From Isurus oxyrinchus (lineage: Eukaryota): 64,000 bases of DNA. Shown piece by piece: positions 14,496 to 54,074 of this stretch. The stretch is taken from contig JANJGN010000150.1 of assembly GCA_026770705.1 (NCBI GenBank), forward strand, positions 310,001-374,000, written 5' to 3'. Each line of letters starts with the position of its first letter. The stretch's first letter is position 1. The notes beneath the pieces were generated by a model. It saw only the letters and a list, made by a program, of their open reading frames with translations. It had not been told where the DNA came from and did no database searches. A program made the position numbers and the translations under genes.

Positions 14496-14509
14496 GTAAG
14501 TATGGACAT

Positions 14510-18060: not shown

Positions 18061-18147
18061 GAGTGTCTGTGACCCTATTGAAAAATCAGAGGACAAATCC
18101 AAATTGTTTTCTGCTTGTCAGTTAACTTCTGGAACTTTCTATTACAG

Positions 18148-19706: not shown

Positions 19707-19988
19707 ACACACCACAGAATCTCTCAATTAATTCTCTTGATATAATTAACGCTTCATCGATCAATATAATTGAGGGGAATTCTGCAGTGATAATCTGCTC
19801 TGTCGAGAGCTTCCCAGCTTCTAACCTGACGTGGTGACATCTTAATGTCCCAATGAACAGAACAAGTTCCAACAATGAGCTGTGGTTGGTGATTCCTCAC
19901 GTTACATCCAGGGACACGGGACACTATCAGTGTGCGGCAGAGAAGGAACATGGAGCAGTGGAGGGATTTATAACCATCTCTGTGGAAC
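19707..19988 (+). pseudogene. Disabled membrane-proximal C2 exon, unit A
   Basis: Paralog of 50839-51120 with CGA>TGA stop at 19835-19837; the acceptor lacks a pyrimidine tract. Confidence 0.85.
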
Positions 19989-20019
19989 GTGAGTTACACA
20001 GAATTGAACGTTCTTGTGT

Positions 20020-22739: not shown

Positions 22740-22779
22740 ATGATCAGGAAATCTTACTTCCTCCTGTCACTTCTCCAAG
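22740..22779 (+). CDS. Leader exon, copy 5 (MIRKSYFLLSLLQ)
   Basis: Paralog of copies 1-4, with exon 1 upstream (donor after 22296). Confidence 0.75.
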
Positions 22780-25625: not shown

Positions 25626-26484
25626 GTAAGTGCTGTGTTATAATTACTCAACAATTCACATTCAACACTCAATGGGAAATAACACTAACTGTGACGTTTA
25701 CATATTAACACAAAACACAGCTTATTATAACACACTGTCTGATTCTCAATAACCTGGTGATAGCTTCCAGTTCAGTCCTAAAGCAACCTCTAATACTCAC
25801 TTTAATATCAATGATGAAAAGCATTAACTGTATTATCAGGTTATCCATTCCCATCAATCTCTCCTGTCCTGTTTAAAAGTCTGACGTATCGATAAAAGAA
25901 AGATGTGCATTTCTGCAGCGCAATTTACCACCTCAGGAGGATCCAAATCCCTTCACAGCCAATGAAATTATTCCTGAATTGTAGTCACAGATGTAAAACA
26001 CAGCAGGCAGTTTGTGCACAGCAAGATCCAACAAACCACAAGGTGATAAATCACCCAGATCACTGAGGAAATGAGAAGCCAGTGAACTCAAACCTCTGGT
26101 CTGATGAAGAGTCATACGGACTCGAAACGTTAACCCTGTCTTCCTCTCCACTGATACTGTCAGACCTGCTGAGTCTTTCCAGCAATTTTTGTTTTTGTTT
26201 CAGATTTCCAGCATCCGCAGTATTCTGCTTTTAACTCCAATCTCTGGTCTGAGCCTCTTCTCTCATCCAGTGTTCTCAATTCACATGTCTCGGAGTGAAC
26301 GTGTATTAAGCTGAGAGACAGAAACACTACTGCCAAAGAGCAAGAAAATCTTTCCTGATCATTGTAACCTCTCAGTTCTGATATCATCCTTGTAAAAGTG
26401 CTTTCTCTTGTGGGACTGTGGTTTCTATTTGAACTGATGCTTCATGTTATATTTCTCTAAAAGGATCCATTTTCTGTCTGTTAG

Positions 26485-26781
26485 ATTTCACAGATAAACC
26501 CACGATATTCCCTGCTGAAATTATTGCAGGAAAGCGTATGGATGTAAGCTGCACCTTCAACACAACGTGCAATGGAACAGCAGCACCTGTCTTAACCTGG
26601 GACACTCCCACTGACGTACCTGGATCAGTCTCAAACACTGTAACTCAGCATGGTGTCACTCTGACCTATACTTCTGTTCTGACCCTGATCCCATCACTCA
26701 AACACCACGGACACACTCTCAGCTGCAGAGTGAGATATCCATCTGTTTCATCGGAGCGGACCCTCGTACTAACTGTGCAAG
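26485..26781 (+). CDS. Siglec C2-set domain 2 exon, unit B
   Basis: Near-identical to 14199-14495, open, phase 1-1. Confidence 0.88.
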
Positions 26782-27103
26782 GTAATTACATACACTTTCA
26801 TTCTACATCAGCACTCCCTCAGCGCTGACCCTCTGACAGTGCAGCCCGTTCTCAGTATCCACATTCTAAGGCCTCTCTAAGTGCTTCAAAGTCGATAGAA
26901 GTTAATTGATCTTTATTTGATTATTGCTGAATGAAGAGACAAGCTGTCTAAACTTTACATCTCACACACACCATTCTCCATGGCAACACCTCCACCTATC
27001 AGAGACCACTTGTCAACCAATCAGCACTCTCTTCCCATTAAGTATAAATTGTTGTTCACTTTCTGTTGGTAATCCTGTGAACGGGCTTCTTGATTCCTGC
27101 CCT

Positions 27104-27256
27104 GACATCTTAATGTCCCAATGAACAGAACAACTTCCAACAATGAGCTGTGGTTGGTGATTCCTCACATTACATCCAGGGACACTGGAGACTATCAGTG
27201 TGTGGCAGAGAATGAACATGGAGCAGTGGAGGGATTCATAACCATCACTGTGGAAC
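27104..27256 (+). pseudogene. 3' half of a membrane-proximal C2 exon, unit B
   Basis: HLNVPMNRTTSNNELWLVIPHITSRDTGDYQCVAENEHG; 5' half and acceptor replaced. Confidence 0.85.
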
Positions 27257-28934
27257 GTGAGTGTACACAGACTTCAACATCTCTCGCAGATTCGAACACG
27301 ACACAAACACCCTCAAACATACACATCTAAGTAGACACATGCAGACACACATATATGACCACACAGAAAGACACACTCACACACAAACACACTAACACAC
27401 ACTCCCCTGTGGGCGACCTGACCTCCCTCAGTACTGCCCTGGAGAGTTGGCCTGAATTCTGGGATTTGTGTTCCCATTCATATTTATGCAAGAATATGGA
27501 AATTACAAAGTCTATTACAGACAGTCAGATGCATAGAGACACTCACAGATACTCTCTGCCTCTCCAACTCTCTCTCTCCCTTTAAGAAGCTTCCTGAAAG
27601 CTCACCCTTCGAACAATCACCGGTCCCAAATCCTCCTTATCTGATTTGTGTGATTTTCTTTGTGTATTTGAGAGTAAGAGAGAGGTGGAGAGGTTTAGGA
27701 GGAGAATTCCTGTTGGTGAAAAGCTTACATCATGTTCTCACCTTTCCAGTGCCCATATTTTACATGATGTCCAATGTCCTTGTTCATAATGGGAATTGCC
27801 TATGTAAACATCACGCTGTAGTTACAGTCTCCTACCAGTGGTGGCATTGTAGCACTTAATCCTTGTGTTTTCCAGCTTTTCAAGCAACTCCACTTCCCAG
27901 TTTGCTCCACAAGCTGTGAGTTCATTGGAATTCAATTATTTCTCAAACGGTAGATTTGATGTCATTTTATTGAAAACTTCCTCAGTGCCTCCCTGAAGGG
28001 TTTACACTCTCTGGGAAGCAGGAATAGGCTGGATGTTGGGGAGTTCATCTTTTCCCAAAGAGTAGTGATCCTCGGGAATGTGCTGTCAGTGGGTGTGGTA
28101 GTTCCTGTTTCTCTGTCGCCTTCAAGAGGGATCTGGAGTCGTTACTGACTGGGGGAGAGATCATGGAAACGGAGAATGATACAGCACAGGAGGAGGCCAT
28201 TCAGTCCATTGTGCCTGTGCCAGGTCTTTCAATGTTCTATCCAATCAGATCCAATAACCACCATTCCAATTTGCCACCATCTTCCTCCTTTAAGTATTTA
28301 TCCAATTTCCCTTTTGAAAGTTCCTATTGAATCTGCTTCCACCGCCCTTTCAGGCAGCACCTTCCAGATCACAACAACTCGCTCTGTCAAAACAAATTCT
28401 CCTCATCTCCCCCTCTGGTTCGTCAATCTGTGTCCCTCTGGTTACCGAGCCTCCTGCCCCTTAAGTACATTGATACTGTTCACCTCAACCACTCCCTGTG
28501 GGAGCGAGTTCCACATTCTCCCCTCTCTCTGGGTAAAGATTGGAACTGTTTATTAAGTGAGGCCTGTAAGTCCGTGGGGGAGTCCATCTCGATCCTGCCC
28601 GATTCGTACACGCGTCCGAGATGGATTTCCACCCTGCACTAAACGTTTCCAGAATTTTCTACAGCACAATCCTGTACACAACAATTGGGAGAAACATTGG
28701 ACAGGGAGTCCAACAGCACAATGATCCATTCTCACCAATGTTCCACGCTAAGGGGAAAGTTCCGATTGTCCACTCTTAGAGTGTTTACAATGAAAACATT
28801 CATTCCACATTGAATCCCAGTGGATGGGTCAATATTACAACAAATGTTGCAGTGATATGAAGCTTGATTGTTCAGCCAGAGTGAGAGATTGAAAGCGGAG
28901 AGTCAGTGATGATTTCTTTCTGTGTGTTCTCTAG

Positions 28935-32544: not shown

Positions 32545-34500
32545 GGAAGGGGAGCCAATCAATCGGGCTGCTTTGTCCTGGATGGTGTCAAGCTTCTTGA
32601 GTGTTGTTGGAGCTGCACTCATCCAGGCATGTGGAGAGTATTCCATCACACTCCTGACTTGTGCGTTGTAGATGGTGGACAGGATTTGGGGAGTCAGGAG
32701 GTGAGTTACTGTCTGCAGGGTTCCCAGCCTCTGACCTGCTCTTGCAGCCACAGTGTTTACATGGCTGGTCCAGTTCAGTTTCTGCTCAATGGTAACTCCC
32801 AGGATGTTGATATTGGGGGATTCAGTGATGGTAATGCCATTGAATGCCAAGGGGCGATGGTTATGAATGGTCTGTGGGATATTCTGGTACAAAATGTCAA
32901 CACTCGGACTCCAGATGCAATATTCAAGTGGTTCCTTTATTAGGCATGTGGGGAGCAAACGCTGAGCAGTCCAGGCGCTTCTCCACCGAAGTTCAAATGA
33001 GCACAGTTTATATATTTTTTACTCTCAGTTACAAGGTAATGGTATTAGTTAGACAAAGGCCACAGCACAATGACCCTCCGGTGGGCTGATAATTGTGTTC
33101 TTGTACAGTAATTACAGGGCAGAGACTGGCTATTGTCCTTTTGAGACAGCAAAGAATCTATGTTTGTTCGATACAAAAGGTTTCCGGAGGCTGACTGGAT
33201 GTGGTTCAAGGCCATCGGACGGTGTGAAATAACCTTCCCCAATTCTTGATTGAGTCACCCTGTGTCCTTGTGTGTGTGTCTCCCATTTCCTCATTGCAAA
33301 TTTCCAGCTGAGCCCTCTGTACAGGTTTTTAGCTTTCACGTAAGGATGTGATTGTCTGTGTACGCTTTGTCACCCTAGCTGCTGGTCCTGGCTGGCTCTT
33401 TAAAATAAATCCAAATTTTCTGCGCCTTCAGTTAGATTCTCTCTTGTTGGAGTGGGCATTGCCTGGCACTTGTGTGGCATGAATGTTACTTGTCACCTGT
33501 CAGCCCAAGCCTGGATGTTGTCCAGGTCTTGCTGCATTTGGACATAACTTGCTTCAGTATCTGAGGAGCCATGAATGATGCTGAACATTGTGCAAACATC
33601 AGCAAACATCCCCACTTCTGACCTTATGATGGAAGGAAGGTCATTGATGAAGCAGTTGAAGATGTTTGAGCCTAGGACACTACCCTGAGTAACTCCTGCA
33701 GTGATGTCCTGGAACTGAGATGATTGACCCCCAATAATCACAACCATCGTCCTTTGTGCTGGGTATGACTCCAAGCAGCGGAGAGTTTTCCCCCGATTCC
33801 CATTGACTCCAGTTTTGCTCGGGCTCCTTGTTTTGCCACACTCAGTCAAATGCTGCCTTGATGTCAAGGGCAGTCACTCTCACCTCACCTCTGGAGTTCA
33901 GCTCATTTGTGCATGTTTGAACCAAGGCTGTAATGAGGCCAGGAGCTGAATGATCCTGGTGGAACACAAACTGAGCGTCAGTGAGCAGGTTCTTGGTAAG
34001 CACGTGCTGCTTGCAAGCGCTGTTGATGACCCCTTCCATCACTTTAGTAATGATCAAGAATAGACTGCTGGGGAATTGGCTGGGTTGGATTTGTCCTGCT
34101 TTTTGTGTACAGGACGTACCCCATAGCCGGGTAGTTGCCAGTGTTGCAGCTGTACTAGAAAATTCCAGAAAAGCTTGGCTAGGGGCGCAGCAAGTTCTGG
34201 AGCACAAGTCTTCAGTACTATTGCCGGAATAATGTCAGGGTCTGGAGCATTTGCAATATCCAGTGCCTTCAGCCCTTTCTTGATGTCACGTGGAATTAAT
34301 CGAATTGGCTAAAGATTGGCATCTCTGATGCTGGGGACCTCAGGAGGAGGCCGAGATGGATCAGCCACTCAGCACTTCTGGCTGAAGATTGTTGCGCATG
34401 CTTCAGTCTTGTCTTTTGCACCGATGTGCTGGGCTCCTCCATCATTGAGGATGGGGATATTTGTGGAGACTCCTCCTCCAGTGAGTTGTTTAATTGTCCA
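32545..34500 (-). mobile_element. CR1/L2-clade LINE RT fragments (32545-32850 and 33450-34500)
   Basis: GVTQGSVLG..FINDLP..MFADVCT and LGVTIEQKLNWTSHVN motifs. Confidence 0.85.
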
Positions 34501-36916
34501 CGACTGGATGTGACATCTGGAATGCGAAGCTAGTCTCAGTAATGGTGACCATGAAACTAACGCCAATTGTTGCAAAAACCCATCTGGGTCACTAATGCCC
34601 TTTGGGGAAGGAAACCTGCCGTCCTTACCCATTCTGGCCTACGTGTGACTCCTGACCCACAGCAATGTGGTTGACTCTTAACTGGCCCCTGAAATGGCCG
34701 AGCAAGCCACTGAGTTATATCAAAACCCGCCACAGACCAGTCAAACCAGATGAACTGCAGCACTTCGAAAAGGCAGCTCAGCAGCCCCTTCTCCAGGGCT
34801 CAGTCAGGAACAGGTAACAAACGTTGTCCACATCCCGTGAAAGAATTTTGGTAAAAAGGTAGCCGTGTATCACCACCCACGGCCAGCGCCAACCCCCCCA
34901 CCCCTACCTGATTGCACCAGTTTCAGATTACACCAGGTCAATGAACGGATAGAAACTCAAACCAATGAGATGAGCACAGAGAAGGATCAAGCCAGAGAGA
35001 GTTGGTGGGAAGAATTGGGAAAGCAACAAAAAAGGCAGAGCGGACACTAACACTATAACAAAGTAAAGACCAGAGGAGGAAGGAAGCAAGTGCGAAGAGG
35101 AATTGAGAGTAGAGCTGGTAGGCTGCTTGTCAAAGCCAAGGAACATCCATAGGTCACACCCACAGTGCTTTTGGGGAGGGTGATACATGATTTTGACCCA
35201 GGATCATCAAGTTTTGCACTGGCAGAGCCGTTAAAGAAAAGGGACCTTCACTACCCGTGTCCCCCGCCCAACAAAACTGTTGACATGCTGAGTCCACCTG
35301 TACAGGTAACCTCCAGACAGTTGACTACAAAGGCCATTGCAGCTGCTGAATATGACTTCCAGTTTCAAAACCTTCATGAATACAAGGATGGGGGATTCAG
35401 CAGGAATATTCCTGCACATCCTGTGGCAGATCCTGTAAATAAAAGGGACCTTCACTCACTCCTCAAAGCTGCTGACCTGCTGATTCACATCTACAGGCAA
35501 CCTCCAAATAGTCAACTAAAGAAGACAACGCAGCTGCTGAATGTGACTCCTAGTTTTAAACCCTTCACTCTGGAAAGAAGGAATCCAGTGCAATGGCCTC
35601 AGTATGATTCTTCACAGAAACTGATTTTAAATCTCATGTCTAAGTATTATTTTTCCTTTGCTTACATTTTAATCCTTGCACCTGATGGCTTTATCGCTTC
35701 AACTTAAATAACTTTCAGCAGGAGCCAGGTTCAAATGGAATGGACAAGCAGGCTTGGGAGGCCAAAAGGCCTACTCCTGCTTCTGTTTATTTATGTTGGT
35801 GTTGTTATGTAGTGGAACTAGAGAGGTTATAGCAGTTATGAGAACATTAAGCAAACAGCAGCAAGAATTGAACACCTACGTTGTGGTTTATGAAAAGGTT
35901 TTCAACCTGGTCAATTGGTAAAATCTGTTGAAAGTGGGCTATCATGGCGTGTGCCCTTTGTGAGATATTTGTAACAACGTTCTCGATGTCGGAACAGCTT
36001 GCATTGAACAAAGCTGATCTTTACCCAGAACTTCAGAGGAAGGGGGGACAATTGTTCCCTGGTGTGGGGGGCATGGTGGGGGGGGGAGGGTGAGGGAGAG
36101 ACAAGTAGCCTGAAATATCAAGCCAGACACTTTGTGAAGACAAAAGTTGTTTATTCATTTTTTTTCACAAATCATAATCTTTACAATTAAAGTCCCGACA
36201 AGATAATGGTGAATCATGAACACATTGTCGGGGTGAATCTGTGCCCGGGAGCATAAAGCAGCAAAATCAGGAACCCGCTTTACATCTCTCTGAATTTTAA
36301 CTATCATTAACCCCAGTAACATCCATTCAAATGACTTAGTCATAAGATTCCTCACACATTCACTTGCACACTCACACACCCACACCCACACAGACACACT
36401 GACACACTCACTCATTCACATTGACACACACTGACACAGTCACACACACACACACACACACACACGCTGACACAATCACACACATTCACATTGACACGCA
36501 CTGACAGTCACACATACACACACACACGCTGACACAATCACACACATTCACATTGACACACACATATTGACAGTCACACACACACGCTCATAAAGACAGA
36601 CACAAACACAGTCACGTGAGGTGAATAGTGTCGATGTATTTAAGGGGAAGCTGGATAAACACACGAGGGAGAAATGAATAGAAGGATATGGTGATGGGGT
36701 GAGATGGAGAAGGGGTGGGCGGAGACTCGTGTGGAGCAGAAACTCCAGCATGGAACAGATGGGCCGAATGGCTTCTTTCCCTGCTGTAAAACGCAGGTAA
36801 AGTTTCAGTTGGAATTAATGAACAGGGCCTGTGTTAAATAGATTGCTAAGCAGTAGATAAGGAGGGGAGAGGCTGTGGCATGGTGCAGGATGACCTTGCG
36901 TGAATGAGGCCAGGGT

Positions 36917-37033
36917 CTAATATCTACAGCAGAGACCACAAGTCTCATTTGGTTCTCTCCAATTACAGCAGTTACAGCAGAATCTGCAGAGCTGCTGTCT
37001 GCCCATTCTCTTCTGGCGCTGCAGCAAGGAGCC
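36917..37033 (-). CDS. HAMP: Hepcidin exon 3 (RQKR site and mature peptide)
   Basis: cctcctgcttttccag/GGC TCC TTG CTG CAG CGC CAG AAG AGA ... TGC TGT AGA TAT TAG. Confidence 0.95.
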   Translation of the reverse strand, partial: GSLLQRQKRMGRQQLCRFCCNCCNWREPNETCGLCCRY

Positions 37034-40000
37034 CTGGAAAAGCAGGAGGACAATAGGTGAGAACATTCCGGAAAGAAAGAAGGCATCATTTCAATCAGGC
37101 GCGTCATTGGAAGGAGGATGGCGCATTTCTATAGCGCCTTTCCCCTCCTCAGGATGGGCCAAAGTGTTCCACAGCTGAAGGAAGGACTTTTTCTGAAGTG
37201 AGCTCACCGCTGTAATGTAGGAAACGCAGCAGGCAATTCACGCACAGCAAGATCCCACAAACAGAAATGTGATAATGGCCCCGATTTTCAGTTTTTTACC
37301 AATGTCAGTTGAGGGATAAATGTTTGCCCCAGGAAAGCGGACATAACTCCACCCCATCCAGCCCCCACCACCCCCTCCACACATACCCCCAACTCCTGAA
37401 ACACTTCATTTAAATTGTGGCCATGGAATCCTCTACATCCATCTGAGAGGGCAGATGTTGTCTCAGTTTAACATCTCATCTGAAGGACAGCGCCTTCAAC
37501 AGTGCAGCACCCCCTCAGTACTGACCCTCCGACTGTGCAGCACTCCCTCAGTACTGACCGTCTGACAATGCAGCACCCCCTCAGTACTGACCCTCCGACT
37601 GTGCAGTCCCCCGCTGGTACTGACCCTCTGACAGTGCAGCACTCCAAGACTGACCGTCTGACAATGCAGCACCCCCTCAGTACTGACCCTCCGACTGTCC
37701 TGCCCCCCCGCCGGTACTGACCCTCCGACAGCTCGGTAATTTCTCAATTACGCCTGGTGGTCCTTTTAACTCCGAGCTGAGAGTTGCAGAGAATCGAGCA
37801 GACACCCTGAACTGACACTTGCAGTGCAAGTACTGGGAGCGCGCTGGTCATTATCATGCTGCTGTCTGTGGGATCTTACTGTGCGCCAATGGCTGATTCT
37901 TTTCCCACAGTACATCAGTGACCTCACATGAAAGAAAAAAAGCACTTGATTGTCTGCGAAACAGTTTGGGACGTCCTGATGTGTTGGAAGGCGCTAGAGA
38001 AATGCAAGAGTTGACGTTTCGAGTCCTCATGACCCTTCTGAGGACTCGAAACGTCAACTCTTTTCTTCTCCGCCGATGCTGCCAGACCTGCTGAGTTTTT
38101 TCAGGTAATTCTGTTTTTGTTTTGGATTTCCAGCATCTGCAGTTTTCTTTGTTTTTATAGAGAAATGCAAGTCCTCTTTGTCTTTCACTCGATCCTCTAA
38201 GGTGTCTGTTGATTAACCAGCCTCTCGGTGTTTGATGTAGGCCTGGTTATAAACAGTTAGAAGGATCAAATATCAAAAGTGCTTTGGCTGACAGTCAAAC
38301 CGATTGTGCATTCGGAGAGATTAGATACGGTCTGCGCACAATGACTCCAGTCTCTGGCACTGACTGCCGCCTGGGGTCTCCCTTCCACATAACACTCACA
38401 ACTTGCATTTACACAGCGCCTCTGACATTGCAAAATCTCCCAGCCCACATTACCGGAGCGTAAATCAGAGAGAAGTCTAACACTGAGTCACATATGGAGA
38501 TATTAGGGATAGGTGACCAAAAGCTTGGTCAAAGATGTCAGTTTTTAAGGAGCGTCTTAAAGGAGAGAGAGAGAGAGAGGCAGAGAGGTTAAGGGAGGGT
38601 ATTCCGGAGCTCAGGGCCCCAGGCAGCTGAAGGCACGGCCACCAATGGTGGAGCGATGGGAATCAGGGGGACCCAGGAGATGCAGTAATGTCAGAGATTT
38701 TGGAGGAACATCGGGACCGGAGGAGGTGTTCTCCTGCTCCATATCTCTCTCTCTCTTCCTCTCATCCACTCCTCCTCTCCCTGTCTCTCTCACCTACTCT
38801 TCCTCTCAATTGCCCTCTCTCCCAATCTTTCTCTCCTCTCTCCCTTTTCCTGTCTCTCTCCCTCTCTCTCTCCCTGTCTCCTTCTCCCACTCTGTATCTC
38901 TCCCTCTCTCTCACACTATTTTTGTACCTTTCGCTCACTCTGTAACTCTCCCTTTCCTGTTAATTTCTCTCTCTTGGACAATCTCTCTTCCCTTTTCACT
39001 TTCCCTCACTCTGCATCTCTTCTTTAATTTCTCCCTCTGTCACTCTCTCCCACCTATGTTCTTTCCCTTTCACCCCTCCCCGTCCCACTCTCTGTCTCTC
39101 TCTTCCAATCCCTCCCTCCCCCATTCCATCCCTCTCTCCGACTCTCGACTCCCAGCCTCTCTTTAACCCACTCCCAGGCTGGATCAGTCTCCCTCTCACT
39201 ATTCCCGGCGTGGGTTACATTTAAAATTCCTGTGGGGATATGTTCACTTCCTTGGAATTGCCTCTTCCCAGCTTTGCAAAAAAAGGGGGGGGGGGGGGCT
39301 CGATTTCAAACCTGCCTCCTGAGTATAACCGAGACAGACTGCCACTGAAATCAGCTTGAAATCAGAAAACTTTCTGTGGAAGAAACGAGCAGGGAGAAAC
39401 CTTAAAATAAGGAATGAATTTCCACCTACCGTGTCCGGGGAATCCACAGATTTCTCAATCGTCGAAGAACCTAAAGCAGTGTCAACCTGCAAAAAGAAAG
39501 AATTTATCAGGGAGAAAGTGAGAGGAGGATTGAGGGAGAGGGAGAGAGAGAGAGAGAGGTACAGGAGAGAGAGGGGGAGGAGGACAGACTTGCATTTCTC
39601 TAACGCCTTTCACCACATCCCAAAGCATTTCACAGCCACTGAAGGATGTTTTTGAAGTGCACTCACACTGTAGGAAATGTGGCAGCTGATTTGTGCACAG
39701 CAAGATCCCACAAATAGCAATGTGATCATGGCCAAGATCATCTGTTTTTGGTGATGTTGGGTGAGGGATAAATATTGGTCCCAGGACACCGGGGAGAACT
39801 CCCCCTGCTCTTCCTCCAAATAGTGGCTGTGGGATCTTTCACACCCGACCGAGAGGGCAGACGGGGGACTCAGTTTAATGTCTCATTCAACATTGTTGTG
39901 CTCCCTCAGTACTAACCCTTTGACACTGCAGCACTCCCTCAGTACTAACCCTTCGATAGTGCTGCACTCCCACCCTATTGTCCCTCCGTCAGTGCAGCGC

Positions 40001-42664
40001 TCCCTCAGTACTGACCCTCCGACAGTGCAACACTTCCACAGTACTGACCCTGTAACAATGCAGCACTTCCTCAATACTGACCTCCGACAGTATAGCACTC
40101 ACTCAGTACTGTCCCTCCAATAGTGCAACACTTCCACACTACTGACCCTCTGACAGTGCAGCACTCCCTCAGCACGGAGTGTTGACCGACGTTATGGGAC
40201 TGAATTCCCTGGAGTGAGACTCAGACCAGAGATTTAGGTAGGGTTGTTCCGGCTGGAGGAGGTTACAGAGATAGGGAGGGTTGTAGAGGCTGTAGGAGGT
40301 AACAGAGATAGGGAGGATTCTAGAGGCTGTAGGAAGTTACAGAGATAGGGAGGGTTGTAGGGGCTGTAGGAGGTTACAGAGATAGGGAGGTGAGTAGGGG
40401 CTGTAGGAGGTTAAAGAGATGGGGGGGTTGTGGGGGCTGGAGGTGGTTACAGAGGTAGGGAGGGTTGTAGAGGCTGGAGGAGGTTACCAAAATAGATACT
40501 GTTGTAGGGGCCACAGTAGGTTACAGAGATAGGGAGAGTTATAGTGTGGAGAGGACGTTATAGAGTTCATGAGCATTGTAGGGGCTGGAGGAGGTTACAG
40601 TGATTCTGAGGGTCGTGGGGCCTGGAGGAGGTTACAGAGATAGGGAGGGTTGTAGGGTCTGGAGGAGGTTACAGAGATAGGGAGGGTTGTAGGGTCTGGA
40701 GCAGGTTACAGAGATAGGGAGGGTTGTAGGGTCTAGAGGAGGTTACAGTGATCATGAGGGTTGTGGGGTCTGGGGGAGGTTACAGAGATAGGTAGGGTTG
40801 TAGGGGCTGGAGGAGGTTACAGAGATAGGGAGGTTTATAGGGGCTGGAGGAGTTTACAGAGATAGGGAGGGTTGTAGGGGCTGGAGGAGGTTACGGAGAT
40901 AGGGAGTGTTGTAGGGGCTGGAGGAGGTAACAGAGATAGGGACAGTTGTAGGGGCTGGAGGAAGTTACAGAGATAGGGAGGGTTGTAGGGGCTGGAGGAG
41001 GTTACAGATATAGGGAGGGTTGTAGCGGCTGGAGAAGGTTACAGAGATAGGGAGGGGTGTAGGAGCTGGAGGAGGTTACAGAGATAGGGAGGGTTGTAAG
41101 GCCTGGTGGAGGTTACAGAGATAGGGAGGGGTGTAGGGGCTGGAGGAGGTTACAGAGATAGGGAGGGTTGTAGGGGCTGGAGGAGGTTACAGATATAGGG
41201 AGGGTTGTAGGGTCTGGAGCAGGTTACAGAGATAGGGAGGGTTGTAGGGTCTAGAGGAGGTTACAGTGATCATGAGGGTTGTGGGGTCTGGGGGAGGTTA
41301 CAGAGATAGGTAGGGTTGTAGGGGCTGGAGGAGGTTACAGAGATAGGGAGGTTTATAGAGGCTGTAGGAGGTAACAGAGATAGGGAGGATTCTAGAGGCT
41401 GTAGGAGGTTACAGAGATAGGGAGGGTTGTAGGGGCTGTAGGAGGTTACAGAGATAGGGAGGTGAGTAGGGGCTGTAGGAGGTTAAAGAGATGGGGGGGT
41501 TGTGGGGGCTGGAGGTGCTTTCAGAGGTAGGGAGGGTTGTAGAGGCTGGAGGAGGTTACCAAAATAGATACTGTTGTAGGGGCCACAGTAGGTTACAGAG
41601 ATAGGGAGAGTTATAGTGTGGAGAGGACGTTATAGAGTTCATGAGCATTGTAGGGGCTGGAGGAGGTTACAGTGATTCTGAGGGTCGTGGGGCCTGGAGG
41701 AGGTTACAGAGATAGGGAGGGTTGTAGGGTCTGGAGGAGGTTACAGAGATAGGGAGGGTTGTAGGGTCTGGAGCAGGTTACAGAGATAGGGAGGGTTGTA
41801 GGGTCTAGAGGAGGTTACAGTGATCATGAGGGTTGTGGGGTCTGGGGGAGGTTACAGAGATAGGTAGGGTTGTAGGGGCTGGAGGAGGTTACAGAGATAG
41901 GGAGGTTTATAGGGGCTGGAGGAGTTTACAGAGATAGGGAGGGTTGTAGGGGCTGGAGGAGGTTACGGAGATAGGGAGTGTTGTAGGGGCTGGAGGAGGT
42001 AACAGAGATAGGGACAGTTGTAGGGGCTGGAGGAAGTTACAGAGATAGGGAGGGTTGTAGGGGCTGGAGGAGGTTACAGATATAGGGAGGGTTGTAGCGG
42101 CTGGAGAAGGTTACAGAGATAGGGAGGGGTGTAGGAGCTGGAGGAGGTTACAGAGATAGGGAGGGTTGTAAGGCCTGGTGGAGGTTACAGAGATAGGGAG
42201 GGGTGTAGGGGCTGGAGGAGGTTACAGAGATAGGGAGGGTTGTAGGGGCTGGAGGAGGTTACAGATATAGGGAGGGTTGTAGCGGCTGGAGGAGGTTACA
42301 GAGATAGGGAGGGGTGTAGGGGCTGGAGGAGGTTACAGAGATAGGGAGGGTTGTAAGGCCTGGTGGAGGTTACAGAGATAGGGAGTGGCTGAGGAGGGAT
42401 TAAAAACAAGAATGAGAATTTCAGGGGAAACGACAGAAGGAAATGATGTTAAATTCATAGAGGGCGACAATATTAAAGGCACGAACATAATAATATCAAA
42501 CTGCGGAAGTGACCAGTCTATCTGGGTGGTAGACGTAGAGTCATGTGCAAGAAACACCTCACCCAGAGGGACATCTCTTAGCTTACCCTCGACAAGGAGA
42601 AGAAGTGACTCAGCTGCAGGGAGAGCAGCAAAGTCAGAGTGAACAAGACAAGTCGCCATTTCAT
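36917..42664 (-). CDS. HAMP: Hepcidin-like prepropeptide gene, 3 exons: join(42664..42587, 39486..39430, 37033..36917), 83 aa
   Basis: MKWRLVLFTLTLLLSLQLSHFFSLSR/VDTALGSSTIEKSVDSPDT/GSLLQRQKR-MGRQQLCRFCCNCCNWREPNETCGLCCRY*. Signal peptide, prodomain, furin site, 8-Cys hepcidin pattern, canonical GT-AG phase-0 introns. Confidence 0.92.
39430..39486 (-). CDS. HAMP: Hepcidin exon 2 (prodomain)
   Basis: ttctttctttttgcag/ 57 nt /gtaggt, phase 0-0. Confidence 0.8.
40240..42390. repeat. G-rich 37-bp minisatellite (ggttacagagatagggagggttgtaggggctggagga) in hepcidin intron 1, with a ~1.07-kb higher-order duplication
   Basis: Variant block at 40291 recurs at 41363; inverted copies at 43128-43240. Confidence 0.95.
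42587..42664 (-). CDS. HAMP: Hepcidin exon 1 (signal peptide)
   Basis: ATG AAA TGG CGA CTT GTC TTG TTC...TCG AGG/gtaagc; hydrophobic leader. Confidence 0.88.
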
Positions 42665-42750
42665 CTGGGAGCTTCCCATCTCTGCCTGTCTCTTCTGATC
42701 TTCTGGCTCTGCTTTGATGCTTTGGTTTGTAACTAGAGGAGCTTCCTGCT

Positions 42751-42965
42751 CTTATACCTGAAACACTTGAAGGGGACAGCTGCGGGTGGGTAGCTGTGTG
42801 GTATCACACCCATTTCTGGATATTGCAGTGTCGATGTTCCCTGTCCCACTGGCCTGGGACCAGCAGTAAGGTCACTGGGACATTGACTGTCTGGCGCCGA
42901 GAACTATCAGTCCCTCCGCAACGCCCTTCACCTTGTGCAAATATGTGTTCATATTGACGCAACAC
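42751..42965 (-). promoter_or_regulatory. Putative hepcidin promoter
   Basis: TATAAG (42756-42751); GGCGCC BMP-RE-like at 42893-42898 next to a GTCT/AGAC Smad element; TTGTGCAA (42933-42940) and TGACGCAA (42955-42962) C/EBP-type sites. Confidence 0.6.
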
Positions 42966-43624
42966 AACATAGCAAAAACATAGGGGCTGGTTCTTATGTC
43001 GGCAAATCAGGTGAACCACACGCCCCCTAACCCCTTACTCCTCTCATTGCTACACTTACTATTTTACAAATTGTGTGCGTTGCTTTTATTTTAGACAAGG
43101 GGCCTCGAGGGGGAACTGATTTACATTTTGTAACCTCCTCCAGCCCCTACAACACTCCTTATCTCTGTAACCTCCTCCAGCCCCTACAACCCTCCCTATC
43201 TCTGTAACCTCCTCCAGCCCCTGTAACCCTCCCCATCTCTTGAAGGGTTCTCAAAATTTCCAACTGTCAAGGAACCCTGGGTTGGTGAGCGTGACCCCTG
43301 ACCTCTCCTAGTGCAATTAAGTTAGGGTTTGGGGGTGGGACAAGGGTAAGGGCATTAGTAGCGTGATTCTCCCTCGTTATGCCGTGTGTTCCCCATTCTT
43401 AACTCAGTGTACTTTGTAAGTCTGTATAATCTCAGTGTCATCCTAATGTTAGAAGTTCATTTGTGACTTCAGTAAACTCAGTTTTTGTCTTGCACCAAAA
43501 CCAGTTGTCTGCTGCACTTTGTGACAAGCCCCGAATAAGTCCAAGGTCTAGAACCCAGGGAGTGGGAGTGATTCAGACGGCTCAGAAGTCGCAGGTGAAG
43601 CTGACACACACCACCACACCCTAC

Positions 43625-44290: not shown

Positions 44291-45327
44291 TCCTCCAGTG
44301 AAACATTTCAGAGCAGCTGAGCTTGGTTTTCTGGAACCAGTCTCGGCCCAGAAGACTAGGGCCCTCACCTGTCGCTATGATCACTGGAAGCTGGGCTGTC
44401 TGCTGCCTGTAGGACACAGGTACTGGGATGAGGTCCTTTCCCTGTATGGATTCTCCAGTGTGTGTCTTCAGCTGATCCACTGTTGGCTCTAAATTCAGCG
44501 TCTGGGTTCCTTCATTTAGCTGCTTAAATGTGGGCTCTTCCACCACTGTGTCTGAGGCTCCCGTATCTGCCCCATTACTAGTGGCTGCCCATTCACTTGG
44601 GTTGTGATGGTTATAGGTTCAGTTTTTACCACTGTGACATTGGACAGGGAATAGACATCGGTATCAGCAGCTTCAGGCACTGCCTGATGGGCTGTCTCGA
44701 TTACACCCTGCATTGCTTTATTACCCGCCCCTTTCTTGTGGCAGTGATGGCATTCTGCCCCCTTGAACCTGCAGGTGTCCGGTACGTGCTCACTCCCCCC
44801 CACATCGAGAACAGGCCAACTTCGGAGTTGCTGCTGAAATACTCCCACGAAGCCTTTTAGTTTCTGGAGCGGCAGAGACTGTCTCTTGCTTGGCGGCTGT
44901 CTCTCTCTCTCTCTCTCTCTCTCCAGTTTGAACCTCACGCCCGGTGATTGGTTCCTGTCCCAGCTGAGGACTGGTGCCATGTTGTACATCCCTTAAATCC
45001 CGCCAGTCTCTCCCAGCACTTTCCATGCCTGGCGCTATTTCCATGGTGCGCTTCAAATCGATGTCGGCTTCTGCGAGTAAATGGCTCTGAATGGCGTTGG
45101 GGTGAACGACACAAACCAATCGGCCCCGCAACATGTCATTGAGTGTGTCTCCGAGGTCCCAGTGCTCAGTCACCTGCTTCCACTTCACTGTATAGGTTGC
45201 GATGGACTCTCCCGGGGCCCTTACTCTGGAGTTAAACTTAAACCTTTTCATTATTACCCACGGCTTCAGCTGAAAACACATCTTCATGAGGTCGACTAAT
45301 TGGTGAAAAGATTTAGAATTGGGTGCA
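44290..45327 (-). mobile_element. Gypsy/Ty3 LTR retrotransposon gag-protease fragment, degraded
   Basis: RFKFNSRVRAPGESIATY..LNDMLRGRLVC (gag), CSRCGG/CHHCHKKG knuckles, GEGPSLLGRDW protease end. Confidence 0.88.
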
Positions 45328-45614
45328 ATACACGTCACTGTCTTCAGCTCTGAGACTGTCAATCCTCACCAAACAATTCTTCCCTTCCAAGTCGGCGATT
45401 ATTTTAGCACGTCCCACGAATGTGGCCACCCCATAATTGGGATCTTTGGTGTATGTGATGATATATTTCCATCTATACCAATATTTGTACCAAGCTCCGT
45501 GCAGTGCTGTGTAAGAGTGGGAAGGAAAGTCAAAGCTACACGGAATAACCACACAAGAGCTGCTGATGGCCCTCCGAGGTAGCGCCTTCATAGACCATCC
45601 CTCTGACGTCACTC
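45328..45614 (-). pseudogene. Siglec V-set exon (unit C), truncated by the Gypsy element just before the essential Arg
   Basis: ctttcag/ GVTSEGWSMKALPRRAISSSCVVIPCSFDFP..W..GRAKIIADLEGKNCLVRIDSLRAEDSDVY, then gag sequence. Confidence 0.88.
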
Positions 45615-45669
45615 CTGAAAGGCAACAAGGGAGGGGACTGAACATCAAAAAGCAGAATATTACTTCAAT

Positions 45670-46120
45670 GGAGAGAGGCAGCAGAATGCGGTACAGAGGG
45701 ATCTGGGTGTCCTTGTACATGAATCACAGAAAGTCAGCATTCAGGAACAGCACGGAATGAGGAAGGCAAGTGGAATGTTGGCCTTTATTGCAAAGGGATG
45801 GAGTATAAAAGGAGGGAAGTCTTGCTACAACTGTACAGGGCGTTGGTGAGATTGTATCAGGAGCAGTGTGTACAGTTCTGGTCTCCTTACTTAGGGAGGG
45901 ATAGACTCTGCATTGGAGGCAGTTCAGAGGAGGTTCACTGGGCTGATTCCTGGGATGAAGGGGGTTTGTCTTATGAGGAAATGTTGAGCAGGTTGGGCCC
46001 TGTATCCATTGGAGTTTAGAAGAATGAGAGGTGATCTTATTGAAACATATAAGATTCTGAGGTGGTGGGGGGTTTGACAGGGTCGATGCTGAGGGGATGT
46101 TACCCCTTGTGGGGGAATCC
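45670..46120 (+). mobile_element. CR1 LINE fragment
   Basis: EYKRREVLLQLYRALVR..CVQFWSPY. Confidence 0.85.
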
Positions 46121-50135: not shown

Positions 50136-50838
50136 ATGTGTAGGCACATACATGCACATTTACACACAGTCATACACGTGCAAAAACCTACACAGAAACA
50201 TACACACACTCAACTCACACACACACACTCACACGTGCACACACATACACATACACATGTACACACATTCACTTATGCACAGAAATATACACAAAGACAC
50301 ACGCACATTTGCGCAAACACATACACACATGCACACACAGACACATGCATGCATACTCACACAAACATACTCACATATGTAGAAACACAAACACATACAC
50401 ATAAACACGCGTGAGGTCCCTCTTCTCTCTCAGGGCTACACTGGAGTCTCGGTGTCAGCTCCGATTCTGTGTTGAAGGAAGGTAAACTCCAGATCAACAA
50501 GACCCTGAACTGGATGAGCAACCTCCTGAACAGAGAATTGTAGATTTACCCCTCAGTGCTCCATCGATCAAATACAATTCATTCCCGTAAATCCCTTGGC
50601 AAAATCCTGAGGATGTGAAAGTTTCTTTCATTCTAGGTGAACAGCACCTCTACTGGTGGGAGAATGTAACTGTAGTTTGACTGTTTACATAGGCAGTGTC
50701 CATTATAAATTTGACAGTGGAAGTTATATGGAGGGAAGGTATCTGGAAATGCATACAGACATCAGATACAGAGAGATGATGCATGGAGTCTTGCTGTGCA
50801 CGCTGCTTGCTCACATTAAACACTTGATTTGTTCTTAG

Positions 50839-51120
50839 ATGCTCCACAGAATCTCACATTTACTTCTCTTGAAATGATTAATGCTTCATTGATCAATATA
50901 ATTGAGGGGAATTCTGCAGTGATAATCTGCTCTGTCGAGAGCTTCCCAGCTTCTAACCTGACGTGGCGACATCTTAATGTCCCAATGAACAGAACAAGTT
51001 GCAACAATGAGCTGTGGTTGGTGATTCCTCACGTTACATCCAGGGACACTGGAGACTATCAGTGTGTGGCAGAGAATGAACATGGAGCAGTGGAGGGATT
51101 CATCACCATCACTGTGGAAT
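50839..51120 (+). CDS. C2 Ig exon D1
   Basis: APQNLTFTSLEM..EGNSAVIICSVESFPASNLTWRH..DTGDYQCVAENEHG; 282 nt, phase 1-1. Confidence 0.88.
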
Positions 51121-51876
51121 GTGAGTGTACACAGACTTCAACATCTCTCACACACACACTCACACATGCAAAAACACTCATGTGTAGACACAAACATGCA
51201 CGCTTACACACAAACATACGTTCAAACACATACACAGAAACACACACAAACTCAACTCACACATACAAACATTCATGCGCACACAAAGACACACACATGC
51301 ACACACACTCCCTCAAGCACAGACATACAGACATACACACACAGACACACACACACACACACACACACACACGCGTCCACACATGTGCTGACAGACACGC
51401 GCATACACACAAATACAAACTCACGTGCAGAAGTACACACACAAGTGTGAGCTCCCTCTCCTCTCTCAGTTCTGTACTGGAGTCTTGGTATCAGCTCCCA
51501 TTCTGTGCTGAAGGAAGGTAAACTCCAGATCAGCAAGACCCTGAATTGGATGAGCAACCTCCTGAACAGAGAAATGTAGATTTAGCTCTCAGTGCTCCAT
51601 CGATCAAATACAATTCATTGCCTATCAAGCCCTTGGGGACATCTTGAGAGTGTTAAAGGATGTTTCTTTCATTCTAGAGGGTTAGCAACTCTACTGGTGG
51701 GAGGAAGCAACTGCAGTGTGACAGTTTACATAGGAAGTGTCCATTATAAATATGACAGTAATTTTTCATGAGGGAAGGTACCTGGAAAAGCATTCCAACA
51801 TCAGATACAGAGAGATGATGCATGGAGTCTTGCTGTGCACTATGCTTGCTCACATTAAAATCTTTATTTCTTTTAG

Positions 51877-52157
51877 ACGCCCCCAGAATCTCTCAATTAA
51901 TTCTCTTGATATGATTAACGCTTCATCGATCAATATAATTGAGGGGAATTCTGCAGTGATAATCTGCTCTGTCGAGAGCTTCCCAGCTTCTAACCTGACG
52001 TGGCGACATCTTAATGTCCCAATGAACAGAACAAGTTGCAACAATGAGCTGTGGTTGGTGTTTCCTCACGTTACATCCAGGGACACTGGAGACTATCAGT
52101 GTGTGGCAGAGAATGAACATGGAGCAGTGGAGGTGTCCATAACCATCACTGCGGAAC
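51877..52157 (+). pseudogene. C2 Ig exon D2 with a 1-nt deletion
   Basis: 281 nt versus 282; ACGCCCCCAGAAT is one base shorter than ATGCTCCACAGAAT in D1. Confidence 0.75.
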
Positions 52158-52982
52158 GTGAGTTGNNNNNNNNNNNNNNNNNNNNNNNNNNNNNNNNNNN
52201 NNNNNNNNNNNNNNNNNNNNNNNNNNNNNNNNNNNNNNNNNNNNNNNNNNNNNNNNNNNNNNNNNNNNNNNNNNNNNNNNNNNNNNNNNNNNNNNNNNNN
52301 NNNNNNACACATGCATAATTATCCACACACAGTCATACACATACAAGCATATACACAGGAAAATACACACCCTTCTCAAACACACACACACATTCATGCC
52401 CACACATAGACACACACATGCACATACTCTCACTCATGGACAGACCTAGACACACAGACACATGCGCATGCGCACACACAGACACATGTGTGCATACACA
52501 CACAAACACACTCACATGTGCAGAAACACAAACACACAGATACACACACGTGAGTTCCCTCTCCTCTCTCAGTGCCGCACTGGAGTCTTGGTATCAGCTC
52601 CGATTCTGTGTTGAAAGAAGGTAAACTCCAGATCAACAAGACCCTGAATTGGATGAGCAACCTCCTGAACAGAGAATTGTAGATTTACCCCTCAGTGCTC
52701 CATCAATCAAATACAATTCATTGCCTGTCCAGCCCTTTGCGAAATCCTGAGGATGTGAAAGCAAGCTTCTTTCATTCTAGATGGACAACACCTCTACTGG
52801 TGGGAGAATGCAACTGCAGTGTGACAGTTTACATAGGCAGTGTCCATTAAAAATGTGGCATAAGACGTTATTCTGAGGGAAGTTACCTGGAAATGCATTT
52901 AGACATCAGATACAGAGAGATGATGCATGGAGTCTTGCTGTGCAATAGGTTTGCTCACATTAAACACTTGATTTGTTTTTAG

Positions 52983-53264
52983 ATGCACCACAGGATCTCT
53001 CATTTACTTCGCTTAATATGATTTACGCTTCATCAATCAATATAATTGAGGGGAATTCTGCAGTGATAATCTGCTCTGTCGAGAGCTTCCCAGCTTCTAA
53101 CCTGACGTGGCGACATCTTAATGTCCCAATGAACAGAACAAGTTCCAACAATGAGCTGTGGTTGGTGATTCCTCACGTTACATCCAGGGACACTGGAGAC
53201 TATCAGTGTGTGGCAGAGAATGAACATGGAGCAGTGGAGGGGTTCATAACCATCACTGTGGAAT
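52983..53264 (+). CDS. C2 Ig exon D3
   Basis: 282 nt, phase 1-1, open. Confidence 0.88.
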
Positions 53265-54074
53265 GTGAGTGTGGAGATACATTTGTTTGTTTGTTGTCTC
53301 CGTGGTCTCCGTGGAGCCATTGGGATCGTGTTGTTTTTAATCCAGTTTTCTTCAATCCTCGCTCAGTCCACGTTATCCACACATCCAATTTTTCCTCTCC
53401 CTTTCTGTTTTTGCTCTCAGTTTCTCCTTCAATGGTTGTGAGGACAAGGCTGTCAGGTCTTCGTTTCCAATCTCCATACTTGACGACCTTTCGCTCTCTA
53501 ACTGTCCTGAACAACCCTTTTAATTGCTGAACTTCTCATTCTTTAATTGATAAATATTATATATAAATGTTACATGTTGAAATGCAACTATTGTATTCAT
53601 AAATTGCTTAGAAATTACTAAACATTCAACAGCCAGTGAAGCATTATCGAAGTGAGCTCACTGTTGTAATGTAGGAAACACAGGTACTGATTTGTGCACA
53701 GCAAGATCCCGCAAACCACCGTGTGATAATGACCTGATAGTCGATTATTTCAGTGAGGTTGGTTGCTACATGTGTAGAGACTACATACCCTTTAGGGAGG
53801 GAAGCATGTCTCGATGTGGATGTGACTCCAGTCTCAGACACCAACATGGTTAACTCACACCTGCCCTCTGAACTGGTCTCCCAGTTTGGGACAAACCAGT
53901 GGTTCAGGAGGAAGACCCCCCACCACCTTCTCAAGGGGAAACTAGGGATGGACAATAAATGTCAGCATTGCCCGAGAATGAGTATTTAAACACTGAGTGA
54001 GTGTATCGCTTCTCGAGATACATCGGAGCATCATTGTAAACCTGTAGTGCAGTAATTAATGGCTGTTTTTACAG

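What the first reader, a model, noticed from the sequence alone, without database searches (positions are those of the whole stretch)
36917..42664. Hidden, intact three-exon hepcidin-like gene on the minus strand inside the Siglec cluster
Seen: three small phase-0 exons with canonical splice sites join into an 83-aa prepropeptide (signal peptide, prodomain, RQKR, 8-Cys peptide). The ORF track lists exons 1 and 3 only in other frames. Known: hepcidins have three exons, ~84 aa and a furin site, and human HAMP lies next to MAG and CD22. Inference: a syntenic cartilaginous-fish hepcidin that annotation could easily miss.
Basis: partly seen in the sequence, partly recalled or inferred. Interest (0 to 1): 0.95.

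Follow-up and report, generated by a model that had tools for sequence, protein, structure and literature searches.

The report
Expressed shark hepcidin gene among Siglecs
This is a real, spliced and very abundantly transcribed gene for hepcidin, the small cysteine-rich peptide that controls iron and fights microbes in vertebrates. In this shark it sits among Siglec immune-receptor genes, as it does in mammals, but its mature peptide is unusual.

Summary
Three minus-strand exons (42679 or 42664 to 42587; 39486-39430; 37033-36917) have good GT/AG borders and both introns are phase 0.

- **Family:** exon 3 alone passes Pfam's curated Hepcidin threshold (31.6 bits against 27).
- **Splicing:** assembled contigs of public run X1 join the exons at exactly the predicted junctions. 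Exon depth there is about 100-900 times intron depth.
- **Neighbours:** CD22/Siglec-type Ig exons lie on both sides, which echoes the mouse order Cd22-Mag-Hamp2-Hamp-Usf2 (PMC12847941).

**Corrections**
- An in-frame ATG 15 nt upstream (42679) has the better Kozak context, so 88 aa is likelier than 83.
- The dominant transcript in X1 differs from the window by one base, so an allele or paralogue supplies most of the RNA.
- The 3' end is unresolved.

**Mature peptide:** 29 aa. The first five Cys sit at positions 7, 10, 11, 13 and 14, which I recall as the human positions. The loop has 8 residues, four more than in bass hepcidin, and carries an N-E-T sequon. The N-terminus is MGRQQL, with no His3.

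The scan's unchecked notes report many similar copies on other DNA of this genome. Verdict: a new member of a known family, of moderate interest.

The parts
42893..42898 (.). GGCGCC, the motif of the two BMP-responsive elements of the human hepcidin promoter. It is followed by AGAC and lies about 140 bp upstream of the TATA-like box.
   Evidence: It is the only GGCGCC in the 64-kb window, where 1.6 are expected. The motif and its human positions are given in PMC3879105. Function here is inferred, not shown.
42751..42756 (-). TATAAG, a TATA-like box about 70 nt upstream of the first ATG.
   Evidence: Read directly from the sequence. The transcription start was not mapped.
42587..42679 (-). Exon 1 coding part. 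ATG at 42679 is preferred and ATG at 42664 is the alternative. It encodes the signal peptide and the start of the propeptide, and ends at donor AGG|GTAAGC.
   Evidence: Translation; hydropathy and Kozak context; exon 1-exon 2 junction in 11 contigs of run X1.
39487..42586 (-). Intron 1, 3100 nt, phase 0. Most of it is a 37-bp minisatellite of 58 copies (40235-42385) plus a 33-bp repeat array.
   Evidence: Joint that skips exactly 39487-42586 with GT..AG ends; tandem repeats.
39430..39486 (-). Exon 2, 19 codons, propeptide.
   Evidence: Translation; junctions on both sides in X1 contigs.
37034..39429 (-). Intron 2, 2396 nt, phase 0.
   Evidence: Joint that skips exactly 37034-39429 with GT..AG ends, in 7 contigs. 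One further contig, the deepest, shows the same junction with G>A at 39431, and it is also seen in run X5.
38088..38241 (-). Minor cassette exon of 154 nt made from a repeat. Its inclusion shifts the reading frame.
   Evidence: Joints 39430>38241 and 38088>37033 at low depth in X1; the sequence shows ag|G and cag|gt borders.
36917..37033 (-). Exon 3 coding part: end of the propeptide, RQKR convertase site, mature peptide, TAG stop.
   Evidence: Translation; Pfam Hepcidin 31.6 bits; alignment to bass hepcidin 1S6W.
36920..37006 (-). Predicted 29-aa mature peptide. It has eight Cys, an 8-residue loop with an N-E-T sequon, and the N-terminus MGRQQL.
   Evidence: Cleavage and disulfides are inferred from the family.
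36798..36916 (-). 3' untranslated region, at least this far. The end of the transcript is unresolved.
   Evidence: This bin has the highest depth in X1. One contig leaves the window sequence at 36798. There is no AATAAA or ATTAAA within 760 nt of the stop.

Best explanation
This is a functional hepcidin-family gene of a shark. It has three exons, is transcribed from the minus strand, is spliced as predicted, and is very abundant in at least one public RNA sample.

Shown here:
- the exon structure;
- the exact junctions in RNA-derived contigs;
- family membership of exon 3;
- the setting among Siglec-type Ig exons.

Inferred from the family:
- The 88-aa (or 83-aa) precursor enters the secretory pathway through its hydrophobic leader.
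- A furin-type convertase cuts after RQKR.
- The 29-aa product folds into the four-disulfide hairpin of hepcidins and is secreted.

Its role is open. The N-terminus (MGRQQL) lacks the His3 and hydrophobic position 4 of the ferroportin-binding hepcidins. The loop is longer by four residues and carries a glycosylation sequon. The scan notes many similar copies in this genome. For these reasons I lean (about 0.5) to a host-defence or acute-phase hepcidin, comparable in role to the extra hepcidins of bony fish. I put a classical ferroportin-closing iron hormone at about 0.35. A lone GGCGCC motif in the promoter suggests that BMP/SMAD control, the iron-sensing input of mammalian hepcidin, may be retained.
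For: - Exons, frames and splice sites.
- Pfam Hepcidin PF06446 on exon 3 alone: 31.6 bits, E 2e-7, cut-off 27.
- Bass hepcidin 1S6W aligns as CRFCCNCC....PN..CG.CCR, with a 4-residue insertion in the loop.
- The Cys pattern is unique in the window.
- In run X1, joints skip exactly 39487-42586 (11 contigs) and 37034-39429 (7 contigs plus one very deep contig), both with GT..AG ends.
- In X1 the exon bins have word depth 1.4e5-6.6e5, against about 6e2-1.5e3 for non-repeat intron bins.
- Intron contigs are 98.6-100% identical to the window at an even depth of about 500-1200, as expected of pre-mRNA from this locus or its allele.
- CD22/Siglec-type Ig exons lie on both sides.
- Mouse gene order is Cd22-Mag-Hamp2-Hamp-Usf2 (PMC12847941).
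- The only GGCGCC of the window lies in the promoter. It is the motif of both human BMP-responsive elements (PMC3879105).
- Hepcidin was reported among nurse shark plasma proteins (PMC9207270).
Against: - The runs are Logan contigs with kind 'RNA?' (a guess), and the tissue is not given. Contigs carry no strand and no reliable abundance.
- I laid contigs from 90% likeness, so paralogues are mixed in.
- The deepest exon 2-exon 3 junction contig differs from the window (G>A at 39431, Thr to Met). Most of the RNA may therefore come from an allele or another copy.
- The 3' UTR contig leaves the window sequence at 36798, and this copy has no canonical poly(A) signal for 760 nt.
- No full-length homologue was retrieved.
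- The single-sequence AlphaFold model was helical at pLDDT 71 and does not support a hairpin.
- Signal-peptide cleavage, furin cleavage, disulfides and glycosylation are all untested.
Confidence: 0.85

Rival explanations
1. It is the shark's true iron hormone. The 29-aa peptide binds the Cys326-type ferroportin and blocks iron export, and the gene is driven by the BMP/SMAD iron-sensing pathway, as in mammals.
For: - Six residues precede the first Cys, and the first five Cys sit at 7, 10, 11, 13 and 14, which I recall as the human positions.
- L6-C7-R8-F9 resembles fish L-C-R-W. Bass has CRFCCNCC.
- The only GGCGCC in 64 kb lies in the promoter.
- The ferroportin cysteine that binds hepcidin first appears in cartilaginous fish (PMC8235187), so a ligand is expected there.
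- The transcript is very abundant, as liver hepcidin is.
Against: - Positions 3-4 are Arg-Gln instead of His-Phe (mammals) or His-Leu (fish).
- The loop is four residues longer than in bass hepcidin, twice the 4-residue human loop as I recall it, and carries a glycosylation sequon.
- The scan's unchecked notes report many copies with mature peptides that differ, which fits an immune family better than a single hormone.
Confidence: 0.35
2. This particular copy is silent or decaying. The RNA laid on it comes from near-identical paralogues elsewhere in the cluster.
For: - The dominant junction contig differs from the window at 39431.
- The 3' UTR contig diverges at 36798, where the window carries repeat-like sequence.
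- There is no nearby poly(A) signal.
- A neighbouring copy is noted as frame-damaged in exon 1 (unchecked).
Against: - The reading frame, both ATGs, all four splice sites, the RQKR site and all eight Cys are intact.
- Seven junction contigs and five loose ends carry the window's own letters at the exon 2-exon 3 junction.
- Intron contigs match the window at 98.6-100%. Introns of older paralogues would be expected to differ more.
Confidence: 0.1
3. It is a chance arrangement of small ORFs, or another cysteine-rich peptide family such as LEAP-2 or a defensin, and not a hepcidin.
For: - The exhaustive single-exon search of 1.8 billion proteins gave only one low-complexity repeat protein.
- The language-model atlas gave nothing.
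Against: - The Pfam Hepcidin hit is above its curated threshold.
- The only PDB match is a hepcidin.
- The Cys spacing is exact, and the spliced RNA has the predicted junctions.
- A 38-aa query cannot reach significance in a library of that size, so those blanks carry no weight.
Confidence: 0.01

Closest known systems
Hepcidin / HAMP (LEAP-1), Pfam PF06446: mammalian HAMP and the HAMP1 type of bony fish
   Same: - Three-exon gene for a prepropeptide of about 85 aa.
- Signal peptide, propeptide, and an RX(K/R)R convertase site directly before the mature peptide.
- Eight Cys in the order C-x2-CC-x-CC-loop-C-x2-CC, with six residues before Cys1.
- Location beside CD22/MAG-type Siglec genes.
- A GGCGCC motif in the proximal promoter.
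   Different: - The N-terminus is MGRQQL instead of DTHFPI or QSHLSL, so there is no His3 (ATCUN) and no hydrophobic residue at position 4.
- The loop between the fifth and sixth Cys has 8 residues, against 4 in the bass hepcidin alignment. From memory the usual range is about 4-6.
- The loop holds an N-E-T sequon.
- By the scan's notes the gene is multi-copy rather than single.
HAMP2-type hepcidins of teleosts (expanded, mainly antimicrobial paralogues), for example hybrid striped bass hepcidin, PDB 1S6W
   Same: - The core is almost the same (CRFCCNCC ... CG.CCR[FY]).
- It lacks the canonical iron-regulatory N-terminus.
- It belongs to an apparently expanded set of copies.
   Different: - The teleost HAMP2 lineage arose within bony fish, so any likeness in role would be convergent.
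- The bass peptide in 1S6W has one residue before Cys1, where this peptide has six.
- HAMP2 peptides have no long glycosylatable loop.
Nurse shark plasma hepcidin (PMC9207270)
   Same: It is a cartilaginous-fish hepcidin detected as a circulating protein. It had no counterpart in the whale shark annotated protein set, which shows that annotation does miss such genes.
   Different: That paper names the protein only. No sequence, gene structure or locus could be compared here.

Membership tests
Hepcidin family (Pfam PF06446) | Match to the family profile above the curated gathering score | tested here: met
   Exon 3 alone scores 31.6 bits against a cut-off of 27, E 2e-7. Residues 5-37 match profile positions 24-52 of 53.
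Hepcidin family (Pfam PF06446) | Eight cysteines spaced C-x2-CC-x-CC-loop-C-x2-CC in the C-terminal mature peptide | tested here: met
   Cys at 7, 10, 11, 13, 14, 23, 26 and 27 of the 29-aa peptide. The pattern is unique in the six frames of the window. The loop is four residues longer than in bass hepcidin.
Hepcidin family (Pfam PF06446) | Prepropeptide with an N-terminal signal peptide | tested here: met
   A basic start (K, R) followed by LVLFTLTLLLSL; the 9-residue hydropathy peak is 2.7. No dedicated signal-peptide predictor was available, and the cleavage site is not placed.
Hepcidin family (Pfam PF06446) | RX(K/R)R proprotein-convertase site immediately before the mature peptide | tested here: met
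   R-Q-K-R precedes M-G-R-Q-Q-L-C. Cleavage itself is not testable here.
Hepcidin family (Pfam PF06446) | Three-exon gene with the mature peptide wholly in exon 3 | tested here: met
   Canonical splice sites and both junctions in RNA-derived contigs.
Hepcidin family (Pfam PF06446) | Four-disulfide beta-hairpin fold | tested here: inconclusive
   The single-sequence AlphaFold2 model of exon 3 has mean pLDDT 71 and is predicted helical. This is unreliable for a small disulfide-rich peptide without an alignment.
HAMP orthologue (conserved locus) | Neighbourhood USF2 - HAMP - MAG - CD22 | tested here: inconclusive
   CD22-like V-set (Pfam Ig_CD22, 33.7 bits), C2-set and I-set exons lie on both sides. 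The mouse order comes from PMC12847941. Neither USF2 nor an identifiable MAG was found in the window, and the scaffold beyond it cannot be read.
HAMP orthologue (conserved locus) | Liver-dominant expression, induced by iron or BMP and by inflammation | not testable with these tools
   Depth is very high in one run, but its tissue is coded and not given. The only lead is the promoter GGCGCC.
Iron-regulatory hepcidin (mammalian HAMP / fish HAMP1 type) | Ferroportin-binding N-terminus: DTHFPI or QSHLSL, with His3 and a hydrophobic or aromatic residue at position 4 | tested here: not met
   The N-terminus is M-G-R-Q-Q-L. Only L6, C7 and F9 match. The requirement itself is stated from my knowledge of hepcidin structure-function work, not from a paper read here.

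The most novel reading that the evidence does not exclude
The gene is one unit of a large, shark-specific amplification in which atypical hepcidins were copied together with paired Siglec receptor genes. These hepcidins have a long loop, may be N-glycosylated, and lack the ferroportin-binding N-terminus. On this reading they have left iron control and serve as very highly expressed host-defence or signalling peptides. Either another copy does the iron job, or shark ferroportin reads a different hepcidin N-terminus.
Probability: 0.3. Interest if true: 0.6.

Novelty: new member of a known kind. Interest (0 to 1): 0.4.

Why it matters
Hepcidin and its binding cysteine on ferroportin are thought to have appeared together in early jawed vertebrates (PMC8235187). 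Even so, I found no paper in the searchable library that describes a cartilaginous-fish hepcidin gene; there is only a one-word mention in a nurse shark plasma proteome.

This locus gives a verified gene model, shows that the link between hepcidin and CD22/MAG-type Siglec genes is also present in a shark, and offers a concrete peptide to test. If the 29-aa peptide binds shark ferroportin despite its odd N-terminus, that tells how the hormone-receptor pair began. If it does not, sharks have turned hepcidin into an expanded immune peptide family independently of bony fish.

On the practical side, it marks a class of small spliced genes that genome annotation of sharks may miss or fuse with neighbours.

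Tried and rejected
**Left out on instruction**
- The three exons were not joined. The full prepropeptide was therefore never scanned, searched, looked up by exact sequence or folded.
- Exon 2 (19 aa) is below the 20-residue minimum of the family scan and was not searched.

**Searches that came back blank**
- An exhaustive phmmer of exon 3 against 1.84 billion representatives gave one hit, a 577-aa low-complexity repeat protein. I rejected it as composition-driven.
- I ran the search for homologous proteins with a contiguous 57-codon reference, exon 3 plus 19 stop-free intron codons, used only to bring the length window to 31-100 aa and scored on the last 40 residues. No candidate shared three words. 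The blank is weak evidence at most, because even teleost hepcidins that share CRFCCNCC did not appear.
- The ESM Atlas gave a best score of 0.76 to an unrelated plant cluster, which is no lead.
- The supplement of the nurse shark paper does not mention hepcidin.

**Uninformative model**
- AlphaFold2 without an alignment gave a helical model at pLDDT 71. I did not send it to a fold search.

**Repeats and extra copies**
- I looked for a second hepcidin exon 3 in the window and found none.
- I looked for the continuation of the X1 3' UTR contig in the window and found no match.
- A self-comparison of the window found no duplicate of the hepcidin exons, only intronic minisatellites.

**Reads**
- Runs X7 and X8 had next to no depth on the three exons and showed none of the hepcidin junctions. 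Their depth here comes from repeats.
Full report
**1. What is in the sequence**

On the minus strand there are three small coding exons.
It can also start at an in-frame ATG 15 nt upstream, at 42679. It ends at 42587 before the donor AGG|GTAAGC.
- Exon 2 is 39486-39430, with acceptor tttctttttgcag|G and donor ACG|GTAGGT.
- Exon 3 is 37033-36917, with acceptor cctgcttttccag|G, and ends in TAG.
- Both introns are phase 0 and are 3100 and 2396 nt long.

The upstream ATG has a purine at -3 and G at +4, and the second ATG has neither. By the scanning rule the product is therefore more likely 31+19+38 = 88 aa than 83 aa. This is an inference, because the transcription start was not mapped.

Exon 1 gives a basic start and a 12-residue hydrophobic core. 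Exon 2 gives a polar propeptide. Exon 3 gives ...RQKR followed by 29 residues with eight Cys at positions 7, 10, 11, 13, 14, 23, 26 and 27. From my memory of human hepcidin-25, its first five Cys hold the same positions.

**2. Is it more than chance?**

- The hepcidin Cys pattern occurs once in all six frames of the window, here.
- Exon 3 alone scores 31.6 bits (E 2e-7) on Pfam Hepcidin PF06446, above the curated cut-off of 27.
- The only solved structure it matches is the hepcidin of hybrid striped bass (1S6W). The alignment reads CRFCCNCC----PN..CG.CCR, which shows a four-residue insertion in the loop.

The joined peptide was never built or searched. Exon 2 is too short for the family scan.

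**3. Is it spliced and expressed?**

I laid the contigs of four public runs on 36760-42750. All runs are coded Logan contigs whose kind is a guess.

In run X1 (organism A):
- Joints skip exactly 39487-42586 (11 contigs, word depth about 10,800) and exactly 37034-39429 (7 contigs, about 2,500). Both have GT..AG ends on the minus strand.
- One more contig, the deepest (about 13,900), has the same exon 2-exon 3 junction with G>A at 39431. This turns the last codon of exon 2 from ACG into ATG. The same form is present at low depth in X5 (organism B).
- The three exon bins have depths of 1.4e5 to 6.6e5. Non-repeat intron bins have about 6e2-1.5e3.
- The intron contigs are 98.6-100% identical to the window at an even depth of about 500-1200.

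Spliced joints together with a 100-900-fold excess of exon over intron depth mean that the run holds RNA. They also mean that this gene type is among its very abundant messages. The intron contigs look like pre-mRNA of this locus or its allele.

Limits:
- Contigs give neither strand nor true abundance.
- I accepted 90% likeness, so paralogues are mixed in.
- The window's own junction form is the minor one.
- The tissue is unknown.

A low-depth pair of joints defines a 154-nt cassette (38241-38088) built from a common repeat. Its inclusion breaks the frame. I read it as splicing noise.

The 3' end is unresolved. One X1 contig leaves the window sequence at 36798, and its continuation is nowhere in the window. 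The first AATAAA lies 764 nt after the stop.

**4. Surroundings**

Pfam and a phmmer sweep of all stop-to-stop fragments give this map of Ig exons:
- Plus strand: a V-set exon that also hits Ig_CD22 (13408-13878).
- Plus strand: C2-set exons at 14147-14566 and 26433-26825, and a C2-like one at 18126-18617.
- Plus strand: Ig exons at 19703-20086 and 27106-27327.
- Plus strand: three I-set exons at 50820-53527.
- Minus strand: a lone V-like exon at 45316-45723.

The hepcidin gene therefore lies on the opposite strand between Siglec/CD22-type exons, or inside a long intron of such a gene. I could not tell which.

In mouse the order is Cd22-Mag-Hamp2-Hamp-Usf2 (PMC12847941). I saw no USF2 in the window.

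The introns are mostly tandem repeats: a 37-bp unit of 58 copies, and 33-bp arrays.

**5. Promoter lead**

A TATAAG lies at 42756-42751. The only GGCGCC of the whole 64-kb window lies at 42898-42893, followed by AGAC, about 140 bp upstream of that box. Shuffles expect 1.6 such sites per window. The chance of one falling in a given 300 bp is therefore roughly 0.008, judged after the fact.

GGCGCC is the motif of both BMP-responsive elements of the human hepcidin promoter (PMC3879105). This suggests, but does not show, BMP/SMAD control.

**6. How it most likely works**

Shown here: gene structure, splicing, family membership and high transcript level.

Inferred from the family:
- co-translational entry into the ER;
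- cleavage after RQKR by a furin-type convertase;
- a 29-aa secreted peptide with four disulfides.

The role is open.
- *For an iron hormone:* the six-residue N-terminal arm, L6-C7-R8-F9, the promoter motif, and the fact that the hepcidin-binding cysteine of ferroportin first appears in cartilaginous fish (PMC8235187).
- *Against:* Arg3-Gln4 in place of His-Phe or His-Leu; a loop four residues longer than in bass hepcidin, twice the 4-residue human loop as I recall it; and an N-E-T sequon in that loop.
- *Also against:* the scan's own unchecked notes report many similar copies on this and other pieces of the genome. One is about 10 kb past the window's end, one is 392 kb further on, and one note says that duplicated copies differ mainly in the mature peptide.

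I did not verify those notes. The 7-11 different contigs over each junction in one sample fit several expressed variants, but at this depth they could also be sequencing-error branches.

My odds are about 0.5 for a host-defence or acute-phase paralogue and 0.35 for a ferroportin ligand. The rest goes to something else or to a decaying copy.

**7. Comparison with what is known**

It is a member of the hepcidin family. The profile, the Cys framework, the convertase site, the leader and the three-exon structure are all met. It does not meet the N-terminal motif of the iron-regulatory type, so I do not file it there.

It works like the extra hepcidins of teleosts at most by convergence.

The literature I could search holds no description of a cartilaginous-fish hepcidin gene. 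There is only the naming of hepcidin among nurse shark plasma proteins, with the remark that the whale shark protein set had no counterpart (PMC9207270; searches). Public automatic annotations could not be checked.

**8. Verdict**

Expectation from the field makes a shark hepcidin unsurprising, so the kind is known. The atypical mature peptide and the apparent co-amplification with Siglec genes are the parts worth following. The scan has flagged the same type of gene before on other DNA of this genome.

Noticed in passing
window 40235-42385 and 43129-43240: Intron 1 of the hepcidin gene holds a 37-bp minisatellite of 58 copies. Three copies of the same unit, in the opposite orientation, lie upstream of the promoter, so the promoter and exon 1 are bracketed by inverted copies of one repeat.
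   Followed up: partly
window 37499-37731 and 39901-40172; also about 16.0-16.7k, 30.5-31.0k, 55.5-55.8k and 63.5-63.8k: Arrays of a 33-bp repeat sit in both hepcidin introns and recur at several places in the Siglec cluster, in both orientations.
   Followed up: partly
window 38088-38241 (minus strand): A 154-nt cassette exon derived from a repeat is spliced between exons 2 and 3 in a small share of X1 contigs. It is not a multiple of three, so it would break the frame.
   Followed up: partly
window 19703-20086 (plus strand): An Ig-domain exon of the Siglec-like gene is split by a single in-frame stop codon at 19835-19837. This is either a damaged exon or an assembly or polymorphic nonsense change.
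   Followed up: no
window 45316-45723 (minus strand): A lone V-set-like exon lies 2.6 kb upstream of the hepcidin start on the same strand. It scores phmmer 1.7e-9 to the V exon at 13408-13878 but only E 0.0024 on Pfam V-set. No other minus-strand Ig exons were found downstream, so it may be a relic of a head-to-head Siglec partner.
   Followed up: partly
window 39431: The most abundant exon 2-exon 3 junction contig in run X1, also present in X5 of another organism label, carries G>A on the plus strand. This is a CpG transition that changes Thr to Met in the last codon of exon 2, and it comes from an allele or a paralogue.
   Followed up: partly
window 36353-36798: The 3' flank of the gene turns into repeat-like sequence at 36798, where an RNA contig stops matching. 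It is followed by a TG-rich 62-bp repeat at 36353-36585, and there is no canonical poly(A) signal until 36155.
   Followed up: partly
window 4193-11069: There are four tandem units of about 1766 bp, 95-97% identical to each other, with a related fifth piece at 22149-23387 at about 86%. This is the leader-cassette array that another note of the scan describes.
   Followed up: no
window 14812-15126, 33496-33867 and 57781-58200: Reverse-transcriptase fragments (Pfam RVT_1, below the gathering score) are scattered through the cluster. These are decayed retroelements.
   Followed up: no
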